Below are positions 26,325-34,398 of a DNA stretch of 64,000 bases, piece by piece. The stretch covers positions 179,404 through 243,403 of IMG/VR virus record IMGVR_UViG_3300010399_000031; one strand, written 5' to 3'. A program made the position numbers and the translations under genes. Positions within the stretch are counted from its first letter, which is position 1. Every line of letters starts with the position of its first letter. The notes under the pieces were generated by a model. The model was given only the letters and a program-made list of their open reading frames with translations. It made no database searches and had not been told where the DNA came from.

Positions 26325-28547
26325 TCACCAATTTGTCCACGACGGATGAACGGGTTCGTCGTACTCCAACTTTCCACTGAAGTCCGATTCATACCCCTCT
26401 ATTTCTGCGAAGTCTTCAATCCCTAAGAAAGCGCCTGCGAAGACTTCCCGACGATCACCATCCCCACTCGTTTCACTAAAGTCCTCCAACGCCAACATGT
26501 ATCCTTCTAGCGCGGCTTGCGGACCTAAGGAACCAGCACCCAAAATCTGTTCGACTTGATCCTTACTCCACTGCATGATGTCATGTGAGCGGGTCGAGAT
26601 ATTGGGTTGACCGTTCGTATCTAACTTAACGTTCCAGATATGAACGGCTGAGTCCTGACCATTGCGATCCGTGCGAGCTACGGCTTGCTCGTACTCATAC
26701 GAGCGAAACGGCACGTTCATCATGATCGTGCTATTGGCCATCACAAGTGGCACTGCCGTGGATAGTGACGCGAAGGTCGCGATGAGGGGGTTGATGTCGG
26801 GGTTCTTCTCAAACGAACCCACGTGAGCCGCCAACTCGTTGTTGGTTTTCCCGTAAACGAGAATCGGATGAAACCCTTGATCACGAAAGAACTTAGCTGC
26901 CGCATCTACTACAGGCACATAACTCGTAAAGAAAATCGTTTTCTTGAGTGAGTGCTCGATAATTTGTGCGGGCGACATTGGAACCATGACCTCATGACCG
27001 TCTTTCTTGACTTCCTCGAACCACTTGCCCTTGAGCATATCTTCATGGCATTTCACCCTGTCTTGGCCCAGTACTTTACCCAAAGCCTCACCTTGGACTT
27101 TGAGCATGTAGTACTTCACGATGGATCGCACTTCTTTGAAGTTATCTCGCAACTCCTTAGGTAGCACCGGCATAATCACGGTTTTTTCGTAATGATTGCA
27201 ATAAGCACTCATCTCACGCATGGTGCGAGGATCAAAACCCTTGCGAATCTGTGCGATGTAGTGTTTATACAACTCGAAGGCTTTACGCTTATCATCCGAG
27301 GTGTGACCTGTCACCACTGTGACTAATCCAGCCGCAACCGATTGCTTAGGCAGATAGACGCGTTCAAAATACGCTAAGATGTCTTGATACATCTGGACAT
27401 AATTGCGCATGTTCTTTTGGTAGTAAGCCACACGCGCTTTGACGTACTCCACCATCCTATCTCGCACTGCATCAAGTGTGTAGTACTCGCCGTTGGCCAT
27501 CTCCACTTCGATGACATGGGTGTGGACTTCGGTTTTCACCACACTGCGTTTACTCACATGGAAGTGCACTTTCCCCATGCGGTGATGCAAGATGTCATTG
27601 GCGGTCGAGGAGGACTTACCGTAGATTGTTTGGAAACGCTTTTGCGCATCTTCATCAAAGAACGGATCGATCGTGGAGAACAAGGGCGTGGCTTCCCGAC
27701 CCACGGCTTTAATCGGCGTACCCGAGGACCACACCACGTGTTGACTCTTGGTGTAGCGGCACAACTCACGAAAGAGTTCCGAGCGCAGCGATTCAAACTC
27801 GTTTAACCCGTGTGACTCATCAAGTGCCACCATCACACGAGAAGGTACACCAATCTGATGCAAGTGATGCAACAGGGTTTCAAGCGCATCGAAGTGACAG
27901 ATGAGGTACTTATCTTGTCGGGTAGGGGCGCGATCCATGAGCGAGTGCCAGTAATGCGGCACTTTGTGAAAGCGCTCCTCGTACGTTTGCATCCAGACGC
28001 GCTCGACCGCGTTTTTCGGGCACACGGTAATTAAGACTTCAACCCCCAGGCACAAGGACAAACCAATGCACATAAGGGTCTTACCCGTACCGGGGTCAGC
28101 CCCGAGTAGGTAACCTTTGAGTTGATACTTCGGGACGACCTCGTTGTAGATACCAAAAAACTGCATCTGGTGATCTTGCATCGTGACGTTAAGCTCGGAG
28201 AGGTGTCCGTAGTTCAGAATGTCAGGATGCTGCTCTTGGGTGCTTTTTAACCACGTATTTTGAAAGAGCAATTCCAGCGTTCTTTTCAACGCCCGGATGT
28301 TGTGTCCTTTGTGGTCTTCGTCGACGATACGTTGCAAGATGTACGCCACATCGACTGCAAAAAAGCGGTTAAAGACCACTTCGCTGTTGCTGATATGCGT
28401 GAATACATTATCAGCAATCTTGCGAGTATTCCAAATTTCGTAGATGGAGCGCTGGACGGTGTCGCCTGGCAGCCCCGAGATGGTGATCAGGTCTCCTGAT
28501 TCTCGCACTGAGATGAGTCCGATCAACCGTCGCAGGCTCGAAAACAT
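26325..28547 (-). CDS. superfamily 2 (SNF2/DEAD-like) helicase
   Basis: Walker A DPGTGKT, DESH, SGTP, QAVARTDRNGQ; start 28547 has SD GAGGT. Confidence 0.9.
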   Translation of the reverse strand: MFSSLRRLIGLISVRESGDLITISGLPGDTVQRSIYEIWNTRKIADNVFTHISNSEVVFNRFFAVDVAYILQRIVDEDHKGHNIRALKRTLELLFQNTWLKSTQEQHPDILNYGHLSELNVTMQDHQMQFFGIYNEVVPKYQLKGYLLGADPGTGKTLMCIGLSLCLGVEVLITVCPKNAVERVWMQTYEERFHKVPHYWHSLMDRAPTRQDKYLICHFDALETLLHHLHQIGVPSRVMVALDESHGLNEFESLRSELFRELCRYTKSQHVVWSSGTPIKAVGREATPLFSTIDPFFDEDAQKRFQTIYGKSSSTANDILHHRMGKVHFHVSKRSVVKTEVHTHVIEVEMANGEYYTLDAVRDRMVEYVKARVAYYQKNMRNYVQMYQDILAYFERVYLPKQSVAAGLVTVVTGHTSDDKRKAFELYKHYIAQIRKGFDPRTMREMSAYCNHYEKTVIMPVLPKELRDNFKEVRSIVKYYMLKVQGEALGKVLGQDRVKCHEDMLKGKWFEEVKKDGHEVMVPMSPAQIIEHSLKKTIFFTSYVPVVDAAAKFFRDQGFHPILVYGKTNNELAAHVGSFEKNPDINPLIATFASLSTAVPLVMANSTIMMNVPFRSYEYEQAVARTDRNGQDSAVHIWNVKLDTNGQPNISTRSHDIMQWSKDQVEQILGAGSLGPQAALEGYMLALEDFSETSGDGDRREVFAGAFLGIEDFAEIEGYESDFSGKLEYDEPVHPSWTNW

Positions 28548-28593
28548 AGAGACCTCGTTAGCTGGTAGAGTATTGATAGCACAAGATTTCGCA

Positions 28594-28632
28594 AATAAAA
28601 AGGCTAGAGGCGGGCTTACCCGTCCTCTAGCC
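28594..28632 (-). terminator. intrinsic terminator
   Basis: on the - strand: GGCTAGAGG...CCTCTAGCC followed by TTTTTATTT. Confidence 0.75.
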
Positions 28633-28878
28633 AAATATGTCATCATTTCTGAGAAGAATAAACATGGTGGACGATAGTTGGATTTTCACCACCGGCCCTT
28701 TAACCGAATGCGGCTATGCCCAAACCGGGTAGGCGTGCTATTCGGTCCCAATGCCGCGCACACTGGCTCGCTGATCGTCCGTTGATCACGATTTCATGAG
28801 GACTTGCCGAGCAACCTGCGATTCCAGATCTCCGGCGTCAGCAGTCCCCGACCGACCGGGAACGGTTTCGGTAACTTG

Positions 28879-29229
28879 TCAGTCATTGATGATCTCCGTC
28901 AGCGTCTGAATCCACTCGTCGTAGACTCCACTATCGAGTGGAGGTGTATCTTCCCGATTGCGCTTCTGTTCAAAACGGAACTTTAGAATCGCCGCAAGCG
29001 CTGCATCTGTGATGCCGAACGGACAAATAACATCTCCGTTGAACCAGCGCTTGAAATCCATCGACATGATGGACTGATGGTTCGGATGAACCGTTTCGAT
29101 GATGACGCGCTCACCGGGCTCCAACACCATCTCTCCGCCATTCACGTTCACCTTTAGAATGGTGGAAACACGAATGTCATCTTCTTCGTAGATAACCTTC
29201 TCGTTGGGTTTCTCGTCGATGGCACTCAT
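28879..29229 (-). CDS. hypothetical protein, possible divergent Tad1 paralogue
   Basis: 'DFKRW..GITDAALAAILKFRF' echoes 'FFQDG..GLTTEALLVIAIHR' of the neighbour; ATGA overlap. Confidence 0.6.
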   Translation of the reverse strand: MSAIDEKPNEKVIYEEDDIRVSTILKVNVNGGEMVLEPGERVIIETVHPNHQSIMSMDFKRWFNGDVICPFGITDAALAAILKFRFEQKRNREDTPPLDSGVYDEWIQTLTEIIND

Positions 29230-29672
29230 GGTTTCAGGTGTCCTTCCACCCCGCGTGCTTTGCGCTTTTCCGTACGGGTGTTGAACCAATCGAGAGCTTT
29301 TTTCATGTGGAGAATCGCCAGTTCATTCTCTTCACACGGGAACTTGCTGTTCAGCGTCGAGGTGCGGTGGATAGCAATCACCAGCAGTGCCTCGGTGGTC
29401 AAACCCGTAACGCCTTCTTCCGGAATCGGACCATCTTGGAAGAACACCCAGCGTTTTTCTTTCTCCCCGTTCTTGTTGACCCAGCGCACTTCGTAGTAAT
29501 GGCCCAGTGCAAACGTGTCATCGTTAAGCCCGGTCATCTCGTAGACTTCCAGACCCGAGTCGTTACTGTAGACGGGCGTCTCGTTGTAAGTGAAAATGGG
29601 TGGTGAACCATTTTTCCACGTCTCGGAAATTGGGGCGTACCACGGATTGATATTAAATTTGACTTCAGCCAT
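29226..29672 (-). CDS. tad1: Tad1-like (Acb2/Tad1 family) anti-defence signal sponge
   Basis: H.Y.V..FQDGP..GVTG.T.EALL.I..HR..FPC.EN.LA..H...AL.W...RT..R..RGVEG pattern of Tad1 proteins. Confidence 0.75.
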   Translation of the reverse strand: MAEVKFNINPWYAPISETWKNGSPPIFTYNETPVYSNDSGLEVYEMTGLNDDTFALGHYYEVRWVNKNGEKEKRWVFFQDGPIPEEGVTGLTTEALLVIAIHRTSTLNSKFPCEENELAILHMKKALDWFNTRTEKRKARGVEGHLKP

Positions 29673-29688: not shown

Positions 29689-31257
29689 TTAGTGCGCCAT
29701 TTCCGCCATCTGGAAATCATTGGGTACGCCATCCCAGAAGGGGAATTCTTCCCCTGATCCTACCGGTCCACCACCGACTTTCTTCAGTGAACTATCCGGT
29801 CCATTGATGTCGGGTCGCAACCCGCCGATCTTGTGCAACTCCAGAACAAGGTATTTATCGACCTCATCCATCACGGGCATCCCACGGTGTTTGCCACGCA
29901 TGATAGTGAGGAACGAGCGGCCATTCATCTTCTCGATGTGGATGTACAACTCCCCATCGACTTCCTGAGATAGACGCTTACATCCATCCCAGTAATTCTT
30001 CTCGGCAATGTCGCGGACAAAGTCCACGGCCCCCTCCCGTATCTTACCCATGGCCTCTGAGGAAAGCTGATGCGGGGTGATAAGCAAAATCTTGCGAGGA
30101 GTGCAAAAGTTCTTCATCCGACGGAACAAGTCCCGGATATCATCTCCAATGGAGCCTTGCGCCAATCCCTTCTTATTGATCAGTGCCAGGTAGTCCAAGA
30201 ATAAGCAATGGATTTCAAAGCCTTCAGCTTCAAACTCCATGCACTTGTTGATGATGTTCTGGTAATTCCACTGCGTGGGGTCAACGTACATCACGCGTAG
30301 TTTGTAGCCGGACGCTTGCAGACGTGTGGTCACATACTGCGCGATGTCTTCGGCTGATCTGGACTTCATGTGCTCCTTGGTGCACTTCAGTCCCGTTTCG
30401 TTTTCATACAGGTGTTCGTAGATAAAGCGCATATTCTGCTCCGCTGTATCTTCGAACGTGATGCGCAAAATCATGGGTCGCTTAGTGGCGTCCAACATGT
30501 GCGGCACATTGTAAAGTGGGATTGTGTCAAAAATTGACAGGTTCATCCCAGTCTTGTACTTGTGCTGAAGGGCCCCGATGACCCATTCCTCTCCCCGGCG
30601 AAAGCCGCCTTGCAGCATTCGGTTTATACCCTGGTAGCCCGTTTTCATGACACCGAAACCCATGTCCATTTCTTTGACGTTTTCAAACGCCTTGGCCACG
30701 GAGTCGATATTGCCAAAGTCCACATCTGAGACGATGGCAGGATCACGGAGAATAGCGTCGACCTGAAACGGTTCCAGCTTGGTCATAGCCTCCGAGATAA
30801 ACTTACCCAGATCAGGGATCGAGTCGGGGCGGAACATGAAGGTGGAAGAAATATCCCGGATGATCTGTCCTAACTCCACCCGTCGGAAATGATCGTGAAT
30901 CTGCTTTTTTTTGGTGAGAATGAGTTTCTTTAGCTTCGATTGAGGGATCTCGCTACCGATACCTTTCTCGAATGCCTGAAATAGATCGGTGTCGTCCTTG
31001 GTATCGACCTTCAGGCGAACTAATAAGTCCTCTGCTTCGTACTCGGTAGTAAATGGTTGATCGCACATCCAAACAGCGGTGTTTTTCAGTGCTTGCAGGA
31101 TTTCTCGACTATGGTCAAGACCGATCGAGACTTCGGGCAACTTTGCTTCCAGAATAATCCGGCGCACCAAATTCGACGAATTCTCGCTTTTGGTGTCGAG
31201 CTGACTTTCCAGATACAAAAGTGTGATCCCGGTGGTCAACAGCAACTTGTGGTCCAT
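29689..31257 (-). CDS. dnaB: DnaB-like replicative helicase (phiKZ gp118-like)
   Basis: TGYQGINRMLQGGFRRGE, ALQHKYKT, LDYL, TPHQLS, RGKHR; divergent from the capsid gene as in phiKZ. Confidence 0.9.
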   Translation of the reverse strand: MDHKLLLTTGITLLYLESQLDTKSENSSNLVRRIILEAKLPEVSIGLDHSREILQALKNTAVWMCDQPFTTEYEAEDLLVRLKVDTKDDTDLFQAFEKGIGSEIPQSKLKKLILTKKKQIHDHFRRVELGQIIRDISSTFMFRPDSIPDLGKFISEAMTKLEPFQVDAILRDPAIVSDVDFGNIDSVAKAFENVKEMDMGFGVMKTGYQGINRMLQGGFRRGEEWVIGALQHKYKTGMNLSIFDTIPLYNVPHMLDATKRPMILRITFEDTAEQNMRFIYEHLYENETGLKCTKEHMKSRSAEDIAQYVTTRLQASGYKLRVMYVDPTQWNYQNIINKCMEFEAEGFEIHCLFLDYLALINKKGLAQGSIGDDIRDLFRRMKNFCTPRKILLITPHQLSSEAMGKIREGAVDFVRDIAEKNYWDGCKRLSQEVDGELYIHIEKMNGRSFLTIMRGKHRGMPVMDEVDKYLVLELHKIGGLRPDINGPDSSLKKVGGGPVGSGEEFPFWDGVPNDFQMAEMAH

Positions 31258-31371
31258 TATTAGTGCATTTCTATGAGTAACGAATTCGGTTGCGGGAATC
31301 TCTTTCATAGAGATCGACGCCGCGCGTATTTTTAGTCAACAAAACTTTTCTGACCCTTTCAGGAGTGTCTT

Positions 31372-31968: not shown

Positions 31969-32015
31969 GGTTCACACCCCAGAAGCATTTTCTAAAACGC
32001 ACCAATGAGGTAATA

Positions 32016-34274
32016 ATGTCTGCTCTGACCCTTTTCCGGCATAAGGCCCCGAAAGCAACGCCGTCCGCAACCGCATTGGACGATTTCGCCCAGCAACTGC
32101 GTCAACACATCGACGGCGCTGGTGCAACGTTCAAAGATCCCTCGCTTGGCGCGGCTGCTGTTGCGATGGAGAACTTCAACGAAGACGTCGCGGGTCGCAT
32201 GACCGACACGCTGCAAGAGTTGAATGTCGCGCTCGAATCGGTGCTGCAAAACATCGGCATGCCGCTCGCTTCGGCAAACGACAAAGAAGATCCGTATCAC
32301 AAGTTTGGCGTTACCAAGACGCAGATGGAGTCCGCTATCGCTGCCGGCATCATGGCCTCGAACGTGGAAGCCGCGCTCGGCGCAACATATGCGGCCGAAT
32401 CGATGCGTGTTCAGCCGGACACGGCGTTCCGCACGACGAAGGTGATGGATGTGTTCGCGCCGGACCAAGTCTCGCCGGACAAGCGTCTTGCGCTCGAAGC
32501 GTACGACGAGAAGGACAACAAGAACGCGATGGTGTATTCGGTCGCGTACAACATGCAAGCGGCCAAGCAAGACGCGTTTGCTGAAATGTTCTTCCCGACG
32601 GTCGTCGTCACGCCCGATCAGGTTGGCTTCACGATGTCGATCCGCCTGATCAACGTGTACAACGAAGTGCGCCGCGACATCTCGGGCAAGCCCAGTCAGA
32701 ATTTCAACAAGCGCAACATCGTCCAGGCCGTGATCGACCCGACGATTCTGCGCAACGACACGACCCGTATGTACCCGGTCGTGCGTCCGGAAAGCACCGC
32801 CATGTTCGTTTCGTCGGGCGACGTCGCTCCGCGCAACATCACGCTGGATGACGGACAGGTCATCACGACTGCGCCGTTGGCGATGCAAACGGAACTCTCG
32901 CTGATCGCGATTTCGCAGACCGATGCCCTGCTTCAGACCGGCATCATGGATTCGACCGATGCGATCGATACGGCAATCGGCCTGGACAACCTGTACTTGA
33001 AACTCTCGGGTACGGTCAGCGGTACACCCACGACCGAAGTCGTGAAGTTCTCCACGCGGCGTCTGCCCCTTGCGACGTTCAACTACGCTCCGCAAGGCAA
33101 CTACCGCACGATGCTGCTGAACTTCAGCACGACGAGCCTGCTCGTAAACGGCACGACGACGAAGGTCGACGGCTCGACTTCGCAGCTGCTCACGTTGCTC
33201 CAATCGGGCAACTACAACGTGCGACTGGGTGTGTACGTCTCGGGTCAGGTGAACTGCGAACTGGGTGACACCAACATCATGGCGTCGAAGGTTTCGGTGC
33301 AATCGGTGCGCAATGCCGCCGGAGAAGCGCTCGATCTGACGACGGGCGACGGTGCAACGATCGTTGCTCTGTTTGCCAACGCCACGATGATCGGTTACGA
33401 TCTCGAAGCGCGCCGTACGAACAGCAACCGCCGTGAACGCGGTCAGTTGCTCGACACGACGTTCTACAACCAAGTGTACGCAGTGCCGCTGCGGGCTCCG
33501 ATCACGATTCCGCGTCCGCTCACGATCGGCGATGCCAACGATTCGAGCGATCTTGCCGCTCTGATCACGGCAACGCACGTGCGTACGACGAACGCGGCGA
33601 TCGACGAGCTGCTTAATGCAGCGAACGTACTTGAAGCATACGTCTCGAATCTCGACCCGCTCGGTACGATTCCGGACGTGCTCGGTGTGACGCGTTTCCT
33701 CGTGACGCCGTTCTTCGAGCGCAAGACGATCGACGTGGCTGCGGTCATCAACAACCTGACGTCGCAAAATCGTCCGGCGGATCTGTCGGCTGTGATCGTG
33801 AACTACCTGCGCGACACGGTCTACCGCATGTACACGGCGTCGGGCTACAAGGCTGCGGCTGACGCGCTCGCTGGCGGTATCGGTCCGGTTCCGACGGTCA
33901 TCATCGGTACGGATCCGACGATCGCACGCTACATCAATGTGGAAGGCGATCTGCGCACGCTCGGCGGCTCGTTCAACGTGCGTGTTGAGTCGACGCTGAA
34001 CACGAACATGGCTGGTAAGATCGTCGTGTCGTTCGGCGAATTCGGTACGGGCAAGGAAGGTGTGCCCAACCCGATGCACTTCGGTAATATGGCGTGGAAG
34101 CCGGAACTCACGCTCGTGCTGCCGCTGCACCGCAACGGCGCAAACAGCAAGGAACTCACGGTTCAGCCGTCGTTCCTGCACGTCGTGAACCTGCCGGTGA
34201 TGGCCATGTTCGACGTCGTGAACTTGTCGGCCGCTGCGACCGACAAGATCGCTATCGACTTCCACAACGTCTGA
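32016..34274 (+). CDS. major capsid protein precursor (phiKZ gp120-like)
   Basis: 752 aa; 'ALEAYD' maturation site, 'QDAFAEMFFPTVV', 'TNSNRRERG'; extreme codon bias. Confidence 0.93.
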   Translation: MSALTLFRHKAPKATPSATALDDFAQQLRQHIDGAGATFKDPSLGAAAVAMENFNEDVAGRMTDTLQELNVALESVLQNIGMPLASANDKEDPYHKFGVTKTQMESAIAAGIMASNVEAALGATYAAESMRVQPDTAFRTTKVMDVFAPDQVSPDKRLALEAYDEKDNKNAMVYSVAYNMQAAKQDAFAEMFFPTVVVTPDQVGFTMSIRLINVYNEVRRDISGKPSQNFNKRNIVQAVIDPTILRNDTTRMYPVVRPESTAMFVSSGDVAPRNITLDDGQVITTAPLAMQTELSLIAISQTDALLQTGIMDSTDAIDTAIGLDNLYLKLSGTVSGTPTTEVVKFSTRRLPLATFNYAPQGNYRTMLLNFSTTSLLVNGTTTKVDGSTSQLLTLLQSGNYNVRLGVYVSGQVNCELGDTNIMASKVSVQSVRNAAGEALDLTTGDGATIVALFANATMIGYDLEARRTNSNRRERGQLLDTTFYNQVYAVPLRAPITIPRPLTIGDANDSSDLAALITATHVRTTNAAIDELLNAANVLEAYVSNLDPLGTIPDVLGVTRFLVTPFFERKTIDVAAVINNLTSQNRPADLSAVIVNYLRDTVYRMYTASGYKAAADALAGGIGPVPTVIIGTDPTIARYINVEGDLRTLGGSFNVRVESTLNTNMAGKIVVSFGEFGTGKEGVPNPMHFGNMAWKPELTLVLPLHRNGANSKELTVQPSFLHVVNLPVMAMFDVVNLSAAATDKIAIDFHNV

Positions 34275-34281
34275 ACGCAGG

Positions 34282-34398
34282 GCATGGTGAACGTGCATGA
34301 CCTCAATGGCTTCACGCCATACTCGGGGTGACGCTTGGAGTTGAGGTCGTCAGAAGTAAGTAGAGTTTAAGCTTCTGACGCGTTCACCCGAGCCATGC
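34282..34398 (+). ncRNA. structured three-way-junction RNA in the capsid 3' region
   Basis: GGTGAACG/CGTTCACC, TGACCTCAA/TTGAGGTCG, GTCAGAAG/CTTCTGAC, GCATGG/CCATGC. Confidence 0.55.

What the first reader, a model, noticed from the sequence alone, without database searches (positions are those of the whole stretch)
28879..29672. Tad1-like sponge translationally coupled to a divergent look-alike
29226-29672 has the Tad1 pattern. Established: Tad1 sequesters Thoeris gcADPR and some CBASS signals. The coupled downstream ORF retains an F....G(I/L)T.(A/E)AL..I...R core but lacks the C-terminal arginine-rich helix. Inference: a hetero-oligomeric or altered-specificity sponge, located next to DnaB in the core genome.
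Basis: partly seen in the sequence, partly recalled or inferred. Interest (0 to 1): 0.6.

Follow-up and report, generated by a model that had tools for sequence, protein, structure and literature searches.

The report
Tad1 sponge gene with divergent paralog
A soil jumbo phage carries a recognisable Tad1 immune-signal sponge gene followed, with overlapping stop and start codons, by a very divergent copy of the same fold that has lost the known ligand pocket; in related phages this spot holds a changing array of two to five such copies, which may be sponges for other or unknown bacterial alarm molecules.

Summary
ORF A (29226-29672, minus strand, 148 aa) is a Tad1-family protein: phmmer E 2.4e-11 and profile E 4.5e-16 to solved CmTad1. 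It keeps three of the four gcADPR/CDN pocket residues. It has lost both cyclic-trinucleotide contacts (Arg to Glu, Thr to Leu).

ORF B (28879-29229, minus strand, 116 aa) starts inside an ATGA overlap with A's stop codon. It matches nothing by plain sequence search. Other evidence places it as a diverged Tad1-fold paralog:
- Profile-profile alignment to the A family is collinear (E 3.3e-5, score twice the shuffled controls).
- An AlphaFold model built only from B relatives (pLDDT 83) finds Tad1 first in three structure libraries.
- B stops before Tad1's pocket arginines and lid.
- B is under purifying selection (dN/dS about 0.12).

The pair sits in a hypervariable islet between core divDnaB and SNF2 helicase genes of a PhiKZ-capsid-type jumbo phage clade. 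Relatives carry two to five Tad1-fold paralogs there, including chimeras, a fusion and gene-sized indels.

A-B hetero-oligomer: weak support only (ipSAE 0.41, best control 0.03). B-like genes also occur without A. The most likely reading is that B binds something different on its own, but its ligand is unknown.

The parts
29226..29672 (-). ORF A, 148 aa: Tad1-family sponge gene
   Evidence: phrog_2428 E 2e-32. phmmer to CmTad1 8kbb E 2.4e-11 and to PhiKZ gp184 E 1.5e-7. Family profile to 8kbb E 4.5e-16 and to CbTad1 E 1.5e-7. Precomputed PF24729 Acb2_Tad1_hairpin hit. dN/dS 0.14-0.29.
28879..29229 (-). ORF B, 116 aa: divergent Tad1-fold paralog without the canonical pocket; net charge -10
   Evidence: No Pfam, PHROG, PADLOC or PDB sequence hit. 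hhalign to the A family E 3.3e-5, score 34 against a control maximum of 16.6. AF2 pLDDT 82.9. Tad1 ranks first in PDB, BFVD and Atlas fold searches. dN/dS 0.12-0.29. Charge.
29226..29229 (-). ATGA overlap: A's stop TGA shares bases with B's start ATG (translational coupling)
   Evidence: Read directly from the sequence. The same 4-nt overlaps occur between successive islet genes in relatives.
29364..29441 (-). Shared core motif in A (residues 78-103: strand 4, loop, start of helix 1, ending in the conserved Arg103)
   Evidence: These positions are invariant in the A family.
28975..29043 (-). Shared core motif in B (residues 63-85, ending in the conserved Arg85)
   Evidence: G72, T74, D75, A79 and R85 are invariant across the 9-member B family.
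29241..29336 (-). Helix 2 and C-terminal lid of A (residues 113-144), carrying the ligand residues: N116, R133 and R137 are kept; E114 and L121 replace the cyclic-trinucleotide contacts
   Evidence: phmmer alignments, mapped onto the residues named in Li et al., bioRxiv 10.1101/2023.11.15.567273.
28794..28886 (-). 30-codon remnant of a third islet gene (the 'RGMTS' family, 134-180 aa in relatives); its ATG overlaps the end of B
   Evidence: Translation. blastn shows the window lacks the stretches L014 7164-7559 and 7715-8168, i.e. two whole paralog genes.
29689..31248 (-). Upstream core gene: divergent DnaB-like helicase, whose stop lies 16 nt before A's start
   Evidence: PF20307 divDNAB E 2e-119.
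26325..28547 (-). Downstream core gene: SNF2-family helicase, the other border of the islet
   Evidence: PF00176 E 5e-9. The same borders are seen in all relatives.

Best explanation
ORF A is a Tad1-family signal sponge. Its gcADPR/cyclic-dinucleotide pocket is largely intact, so it most likely sequesters Thoeris-type gcADPR and possibly some CBASS dinucleotides. It probably does not bind cyclic trinucleotides in the known way, because the phosphate-binding Arg is Glu and the partner Thr is Leu.

ORF B arose by duplication and deep divergence of the same fold. It keeps the beta-sheet, the strand-4/helix-1 junction and a shortened helix 2. It has lost the pocket Asn and Arg residues and the lid.

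A and B are co-translated from one message that also carries the DnaB-like helicase gene. In the phage clade as a whole they are two modules of a rapidly reshuffled array of Tad1-fold paralogs.

I infer that B works as its own (probably homo-oligomeric) anti-defence binder with a different ligand or target, not as an obligate subunit of A.

Shown: homology, fold likeness, coupling, purifying selection and islet dynamics. Inferred: sponge activity of A, any activity of B, and B's oligomeric state.
For: A is Tad1:
- Sequence and profile matches.
- Pocket mapping: CbTad1 F82, N92, R109, R113 correspond to A's L107, N116, R133, R137. The trinucleotide contacts R90 and T97 correspond to E114 and L121.

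B is a Tad1-fold paralog:
- hhalign is collinear over 72-74 columns. E improves from 0.0074 with 5 sequences to 3.3e-5 with 8. Reversed and shuffled controls score at most 16.6 against 34.
- The B-family HMM scores 29 bits on a canonical Tad1-like protein encoded directly upstream of a B/108-family chimera on a related contig (L020_135).
- B links to the 108-aa family (E 1.4e-7), which links to the A family (E 1.6e-7).
- An AF2 model made from B relatives only reaches pLDDT 82.9.
- The top 17 of 350,542 PDB chains are all Tad1, with TM 0.52-0.61.
- Tad1 chains are the only full-length matches by VIA-align (Z 6.0-6.5 over about 100 residues).
- The top ESM Atlas cluster is 90% PF24729 (TM 0.61).

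B acts independently:
- A B-like gene occurs without canonical A in L008.
- A paralog is inserted between A and B in L012-L014.
- There are two B modules in L019, one fused to another paralog.

B is functional: dN/dS 0.12-0.29.

Literature: known sponges are homo-oligomers (bioRxiv 10.1101/2025.08.24.671296).
Against: - No binding or anti-defence data exist for A or B.
- B has no direct HMMER hit to solved Tad1.
- The structural Z-scores are middling, and helical hairpins of unrelated proteins score as high over about 45 residues.
- The A+B complex model passed its controls, though weakly, so a heteromer is not excluded.
- B follows a Tad1-fold gene directly in every islet seen.
- A's F82-equivalent is Leu, so even gcADPR binding is not assured.
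Confidence: 0.55

Rival explanations
1. A and B form a mixed oligomer. B replaces some Tad1 protomers in the dimer or hexamer, changing the number or specificity of pockets or regulating A.
For: - The ATGA coupling favours equimolar co-synthesis.
- A directly followed by B with the same overlap recurs in four distinct relatives.
- The complex model scores ipSAE 0.41 against 0.03 for the best of 3 controls, with partner pLDDT at least 68 and 78% of contacts shared between runs. The tool's verdict is 'weak support'.
- Both proteins share the Tad1 fold, whose pockets lie at protomer interfaces.
Against: - A pass at this level is more often wrong than right according to the tool. It can arise from memory of solved Tad1 homo-oligomers.
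- B-like genes occur without canonical A (L008, L009).
- In L012-L014 another gene separates A from B.
- 4-nt overlaps join all genes of the array, not just A and B.
Confidence: 0.2
2. B has left the sponge function. It uses the Tad1 scaffold as an acidic protein-binding inhibitor or decoy against a host defence protein, or serves some other non-sponge role.
For: - B has net charge -10 and pI 4.6, with only 3 Lys/Arg in its last 30 residues.
- All known pocket residues and the lid are absent.
- The residues invariant in the B family coincide with the structural core shared with Tad1 rather than with ligand contacts.
Against: - The strong acidity is not conserved across the B family (net -2 to -12).
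- No target is known.
- Sponge families are known to evolve new pockets (Tad2 and Acb2).
Confidence: 0.2
3. B is unrelated to Tad1. The shared motif and predicted fold are coincidence, or B is a decaying pseudogene-like copy.
For: - BLASTP between A and B finds nothing.
- There is no HMMER hit to PDB Tad1.
- The first AF2 model was poor (pLDDT 53.6).
- VIA Z is only about 6.
Against: - Three independent fold libraries rank Tad1 first.
- Profile scores are twice the controls.
- Natural chimeras join B halves to other Tad1-like paralogs (P0020, P0018).
- dN/dS is 0.12, and B is more conserved than A between the window and L012.
Confidence: 0.05

Closest known systems
Tad1 (Thoeris anti-defense 1; CbTad1 7UAV/7UAW, CmTad1 8KBB, SBSphiJ7 Tad1)
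   Same: A matches in sequence from strand 3 to the C-terminal lid. It shares the 'FQ.GP...G.NG.T.E.L' junction, the '.EN' start of helix 2, the pocket Asn and two Arg residues, and the 'RGVEG' lid. B shares the overall fold: N-terminal antiparallel sheet plus a two-helix hairpin.
   Different: A has Glu and Leu at the cyclic-trinucleotide contacts, a substitution class seen in about 6% of Tad1 homologs according to Li et al.. A also has Leu for the aromatic F82. B is about 12% identical in structural alignment, ends near CbTad1 residue 109, and has no pocket Asn or Arg and no lid.
PhiKZ gp184 / Tad1 (8Y6V chain I), the capsid-packaged, injected Tad1 of a jumbo phage
   Same: It comes from a jumbo phage with a PhiKZ-type capsid protein. 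Its C-terminal 70-115 residues align with A (E 1.5e-7 by phmmer, 1.3e-12 by profile). It shares A's 'CEEN' variant, with Glu at the trinucleotide Arg position.
   Different: gp184 is 230 aa. Its N-terminal part is wedged in the capsid vertex and cleaved by the head protease (PMC11297242; bioRxiv 10.1101/2025.11.23.690004). A is 148 aa, lacks that extension and sits in a helicase operon, so it is probably made after infection rather than injected (inference). No paralog array is reported for PhiKZ.
Acb2 (anti-CBASS 2)
   Same: It shares the helical hairpin recognised by Pfam PF24729 Acb2_Tad1_hairpin. It is also a small homo-hexameric sponge.
   Different: No Acb2 chain appears among the PDB sequence or fold matches of A or B. 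Acb2 lacks the N-terminal beta-sheet that both A and B have.

Membership tests
Tad1 (ORF A) | Significant sequence similarity to experimentally solved Tad1 proteins | tested here: met
   phmmer to 8kbb E 2.4e-11. Profile to 8kbb E 4.5e-16 over 97 positions, and to 7uav E 1.5e-7.
Tad1 (ORF A) | Pfam Acb2_Tad1_hairpin (PF24729) domain | tested here: inconclusive
   The precomputed PF24729.3 hit is listed for A and all 13 relatives. The local Pfam scan and the own-genome search with PF24729.2 did not report it.
Tad1 (ORF A) | gcADPR/CDN pocket polar residues (CbTad1 N92, R109, R113) and C-terminal lid | tested here: met
   They map to N116, R133 and R137, all invariant in the A family, with the RGVEG lid present.
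Tad1 (ORF A) | Aromatic pocket residue (CbTad1 F82) | tested here: not met
   It aligns with L107. This position is Leu, Met or Ile across the A family.
Tad1 (ORF A) | Cyclic-trinucleotide site (CbTad1 R90/T97; CmTad1 R88/T95) | tested here: not met
   These align with E114 and L121. The positions equivalent to CmTad1 Q98/E99 are K124/K125, which may be a compensating charge swap in the hexamer interface (inference).
Tad1 (ORF A) | Beta-sheet plus two-helix fold, hexamer, ligand sequestration, rescue from Thoeris/CBASS | not tested
Tad1 (ORF B) | Sequence similarity to solved Tad1 detectable by HMMER | tested here: not met
   No Tad1 chain at E up to 10 with the single sequence or with the 5- and 9-sequence profiles.
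Tad1 (ORF B) | Remote homology to the Tad1 family by profile-profile comparison | tested here: met
   hhalign probability 72-84%, E 3.3e-5 to 7.6e-6, 72-74 collinear columns, controls at most 16.6 against 34. The B-family HMM scores 29.4 bits on the canonical Tad1-like L020_135.
Tad1 (ORF B) | Tad1 fold (N-terminal antiparallel sheet followed by a two-helix hairpin) | tested here: met
   AF2 pLDDT 82.9 from B relatives only. Foldseek top 17 PDB chains are all Tad1, TM 0.52-0.61. VIA Z 6.0-6.5 over 97-103 residues. Top Atlas cluster is PF24729. This is a prediction, not a solved structure.
Tad1 (ORF B) | Known ligand-pocket residues and lid | tested here: not met
   B ends at residue 116, which aligns near CbTad1 residue 109 (range only). 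There is no counterpart of R113 or of the lid. Helix 2 carries Asp/Glu rather than Asn/Arg.
Tad1 (ORF B) | Oligomerisation and signal sequestration | not testable with these tools
   Only the A+B pair was modelled, with weak support (0.41 against 0.03).

The most novel reading that the evidence does not exclude
The islet is a battery of diversified Tad1-fold sponges, each tuned to a different immune signal. The B family and its sister families (108-aa, 'FQF' and 'RGMTS' types) would have built new pockets on the old scaffold and would capture signalling molecules that known sponges do not, possibly ones not yet discovered. A subset might co-assemble into mixed oligomers.
Probability: 0.3. Interest if true: 0.75.

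Novelty: new variant of a known kind. Interest (0 to 1): 0.55.

Why it matters
Sponge proteins have been the tool that revealed new bacterial and plant immune signals; Tad1 gave 3'cADPR and 2'cADPR, and Tad2 gave His-ADPR. About a quarter of tested sponge homologs inhibit none of the known systems.

A clade of jumbo phages that keeps two to five diverged Tad1-fold copies in one recombining islet, only one of which retains the known pocket, offers ready-made baits for unknown ligands. It is also a natural experiment in how a sponge scaffold is re-tooled.

A 2026 review states that Tad1 is so far the only anti-defence protein described in jumbo phages (PMC13282480), so further families there would add to a thin list. 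If B proves to be just a structural relic or a partner subunit, the finding is a modest extension of Tad1 biology.

Tried and rejected
Searches on B that found nothing:
- Pfam, PHROGs and PADLOC.
- PDB sequence searches with the single sequence and with profiles.
- tblastn against 50,697 phage records.
- ESM Atlas search by features and by its own low-confidence model.

Limited or failed attempts:
- megablast of the region against phages found no match.
- The first AF2 model from 5 near-identical sequences was too poor to use (pLDDT 53.6).
- The exhaustive search of 1.84 billion representatives found only 6 true relatives. Two further hits, P0021 and P0024, are repeat proteins matching the 'LEPGE..IEET' hairpin by composition and were rejected.
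- The own-genome search with PF24729.2 missed A itself and gave one chance hit with an internal stop.
- Searches of viral and metagenome contigs with the helicase returned only the same two or three relatives.

A+B complex: weak support only (0.41 against a best control of 0.03; 58 of 80 solved complexes and 2 of 110 mismatches reach the mark, but passes at 0.60 or under are more often wrong than right). It is not used as evidence of binding.

Other checks:
- The sigma-70 promoter and terminator scan found no more sites than shuffled sequence, and is not informative for a PhiKZ-like phage.
- Sequencing runs holding the locus are soil DNA metagenomes only, with no RNA.
- The Tad1 neighbourhoods of three unrelated phages (ABMM1, FLC9, PspYZU05) showed no paralog neighbours.
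- The pseudogene idea for B was rejected on dN/dS.

Full report
**Source of the window.** The window is the last 64 kb of a 243,403-bp IMG/VR virus record with a CheckV completeness estimate of 81%. The major capsid protein at 32016-34274 (+) is of the PhiKZ type (PF25620, E 2e-190). The two genes flanking the finding are a divergent DnaB-like helicase (PF20307, E 2e-119) and an SNF2-family helicase. The same or a nearly identical phage occurs in soil metagenomes from several studies, as DNA only.

**The observation.** Both ORFs lie on the minus strand.
- ORF A (29226-29672, 148 aa) has AAGGAG 8 nt before its ATG. It begins 16 nt after the helicase stop.
- ORF B's mechanical ORF starts at a TTG at 29289. 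All homologs begin at the ATG at 29229-29227, which shares bases with A's TGA stop, giving an ATGA overlap. B is therefore 116 aa (28879-29229).
A loosened form of its helix part matches only these two of 1,354 ORFs in the genome.
- B has 3 Lys/Arg in its last 30 residues against 8 in A, and a net charge of -10.

**ORF A is a Tad1 homolog.**
- It matches phrog_2428 (E 2e-32).
- It matches CmTad1 8KBB (E 2.4e-11), PhiKZ gp184 8Y6V (E 1.5e-7) and CbTad1 (E 1e-3).
- A profile of 15 family members raises these to 4.5e-16, 1.3e-12 and 1.5e-7, and extends coverage to about 97 positions.
- The collection's precomputed Pfam hit is PF24729 Acb2_Tad1_hairpin. The local Pfam copy did not report it.

**Ligand residues of A.** I mapped the residues given by Li et al. 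(bioRxiv 10.1101/2023.11.15.567273) through the phmmer alignments.
- The gcADPR/CDN pocket residues of CbTad1 are F82, N92, R109 and R113. They correspond to A's L107, N116, R133 and R137. The three polar residues are invariant in the A family.
- The cyclic-trinucleotide contacts are R90/T97 in CbTad1 and R88/T95 in CmTad1. They correspond to E114 and L121.
- The positions of CmTad1 Q98/E99, which pair with R88 across the hexamer interface, are K124/K125 in A. PhiKZ gp184 shows the same 'CEEN' variant with a basic residue at the E99 position. I read this as a charge swap that could keep the hexamer while abolishing phosphate binding. This is inference.
- Li et al. report that only about 6% of Tad1 homologs have substitutions in the trinucleotide site and about 12% in the CDN/gcADPR site.

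**ORF B by sequence.** B matches nothing directly: Pfam, PHROGs, PADLOC, PDB and phage tblastn all returned no hit, and BLASTP against A finds nothing.
- Its relatives are very few. There are three close ones in 5.8 billion clusters and two viral contigs.
- A profile search of 1.84 billion representatives found six true relatives.
- Those six include a 283-aa fusion (P0019). They also include two natural chimeras, P0018 and P0020, whose N-terminal parts come from other islet families.

**ORF B by profile comparison.** Profile-profile comparison gives the same collinear alignment each time, from the first strand to the end of helix 1.
- E is 0.0074 with 5 B sequences.
- E is 7.6e-5 with 9 sequences.
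- E is 3.3e-5 with the chimera removed, at a score of 34.1. Reversed or column-shuffled controls score at most 16.6.
- The B-family HMM scores 29.4 bits on L020_135, a canonical Tad1-like protein encoded directly upstream of a B/108-family chimera on a related contig.

**ORF B by fold.** An AlphaFold2 model made from the nine B-family sequences alone, with no Tad1 sequence in the alignment, reaches pLDDT 82.9 and pTM 0.69. It shows a beta-sheet over residues 10-69 and helices at 75-91 and 97-115.
- Foldseek against 350,542 PDB chains returns 17 Tad1 chains as the top 17, with probability 1.00, TM 0.52-0.61 and about 113 aligned columns. Below them TM drops under 0.25.
- Foldseek E-values are only 5e-3 to 3e-2. 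VIA-align Z is 6.0-6.5 at rmsd 3.2-4.4 over 97-103 residues.
- Unrelated helical hairpins reach the same Z over about 45 residues, but the Tad1 chains are the only full-length matches, including in the Foldseek-independent search of 48,161 representatives.
- BFVD returns Acb2/Tad1-hairpin phage proteins.
- The top ESM Atlas cluster is 90% PF24729 (TM 0.61, 104 residues aligned, rmsd 3.3).
- Together with the profile evidence, I put the probability that B is a Tad1-fold paralog at about 0.85-0.9.
- B's C-terminus aligns near CbTad1 residue 109 (ranges only). R113 and the lid therefore have no counterpart, and helix 2 of B is acidic.

**The islet.** The spot between the two helicase genes is hypervariable.

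| Source | Gene order between divDnaB and SNF2 |
|---|---|
| Window and L015 | A, B, 30-codon remnant |
| L012, L013, L014 (84% identical helicase) | A, 108-aa gene, B, 151-aa 'RGMTS' gene, 134-aa 'FQF' gene |
| Contig of P0003 | A (125 aa), B, 180 aa, 134 aa |
| L007 | A, gap, 101 aa, B-like (129 aa), 85 aa |
| L019 | A, B-like (127 aa), 108-type (127 aa), 'RGMTS'::B fusion (283 aa), 86 aa |
| L008 and L009 | 96-aa lipoprotein-like gene, 'RGMTS' (134 aa), 'FQF' (131 aa), B-like (131 aa); no canonical A |

- The 108-aa and 'FQF' families are themselves Tad1 relatives: hhalign to the A family gives E 1.6e-7 and 3.5e-8.
- The 'FQF' profile hits CbTad1 directly (E 6e-5, nearly full length).
- The 108-aa family's HMM hits the Tad1-like proteins of unrelated phages.
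- B aligns to the 108-aa family at E 1.4e-7 and to 'RGMTS' at 4e-6.
- blastn shows that the window phage lacks two whole paralog genes present in L014, as well as the 108-aa gene. The remnant at 28794-28886 keeps only the first 8 codons of the 'RGMTS' gene.
- Successive islet genes are usually joined by 4-nt overlaps.
- In three unrelated Tad1-bearing phages, no neighbour of the Tad1 gene matched any of the family HMMs.

**Selection.** Between the window and its relatives, dN/dS is 0.14-0.29 for A and 0.12-0.29 for B. B is the more conserved of the two against L012 (dN 0.095 against 0.195). B is therefore a functional gene.

**Heteromer test.** A and B were folded together with their alignments.
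- Median ipSAE is 0.41 and the best of 3 controls is 0.03.
- Partner pLDDT is at least 68, and 78% of contacts are shared between runs.
- The tool's verdict is 'weak support'. The mark is reached by 58 of 80 solved complexes and 2 of 110 mismatched pairs. Passes at 0.60 or under are more often wrong than right, and they can come from memory of solved homologous complexes.
- Because Tad1 homo-oligomers are solved and B has the Tad1 fold, the score mostly restates the likeness.
- The comparative data argue against an obligate A-B pair: B occurs without A, a gene is inserted between them in some relatives, and B is duplicated and fused elsewhere.

**Mechanism.**
- A is most likely a gcADPR and possibly CDN sponge without the trinucleotide site. 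It is made from the helicase operon after infection. Unlike PhiKZ gp184/Tad1, it lacks the N-terminal capsid-anchoring part.
- B is most likely an independent, probably homo-oligomeric anti-defence binder on a Tad1 scaffold, with a different and unknown ligand or target.
- A mixed A-B oligomer and a protein-binding role are the live rivals.

**Known and new.**
- Tad1 in jumbo phages is known, and A is a new member of that kind.
- I found no report of Tad1-fold paralog arrays or of the B family in the searched literature.
- The large sponge survey describes sponges as homo-oligomers and does not mention tandem copies.
- I therefore rate the finding as a new variant of a known kind, of moderate interest.

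Noticed in passing
window 28794-28886 (-): A 30-codon ORF whose ATG overlaps the end of B. It is the truncated 5' end of a 134-180-aa 'RGMTS'-motif gene that is intact in relatives. Relative to L014, the window phage has lost that gene, a 134-aa 'FQF' gene and a 108-aa gene by gene-sized deletions.
   Followed up: yes
L019:3463-4314 (P0019); P0018; P0020: Natural mosaics among the islet families. P0019 is a 283-aa fusion of an 'RGMTS' module to a B-like module. P0018 is a B-like protein carrying the 'RGMTS..FHIDEL' N-terminus. P0020 has a 108-family front and a B-family back. This points to recombination between paralogs.
   Followed up: partly
L008:2877-3167: In one relative the islet begins with a 96-aa protein bearing a lipoprotein-like signal (hydrophobic stretch ending in Ala-Cys). 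It is unrelated to the Tad1-fold families.
   Followed up: no
window 29226-29672 versus PhiKZ gp184 (8y6v_I): Both A and PhiKZ gp184/Tad1 have 'CEEN' at the start of helix 2, with Glu where CbTad1 and CmTad1 have the trinucleotide-binding Arg. Both also have a basic residue where CmTad1 has E99. This may be a compensating charge swap typical of jumbo-phage Tad1.
   Followed up: partly
window 31992-34298 (-): A 768-aa antisense ORF, rich in Arg, His and Val, runs opposite the PhiKZ-type capsid gene (32016-34274, +). It is almost certainly a non-coding shadow of the capsid gene.
   Followed up: no
window 29689-31308 and 26325-28646 (-): The mechanical ORFs of both helicases are longer than their orthologs. 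Relatives start the DnaB-like protein at 'MDHKLLL' (window 31248) and the SNF2 protein at 'MF.SLRRLIG' (window 28547).
   Followed up: partly
ORF A, Pfam PF24729: The precomputed hit is to PF24729.3. The local Pfam scan and the PF24729.2 genome search did not detect A at E up to 10, so detection of this family depends on the model version.
   Followed up: partly
L017:1784-2800 (Burkholderia jumbo phage FLC9): A 338-aa protein whose last 85 residues or so are Tad1-like, resembling the PhiKZ gp184 layout of an N-terminal extension plus a C-terminal Tad1 module. It may be another packaged Tad1.
   Followed up: no
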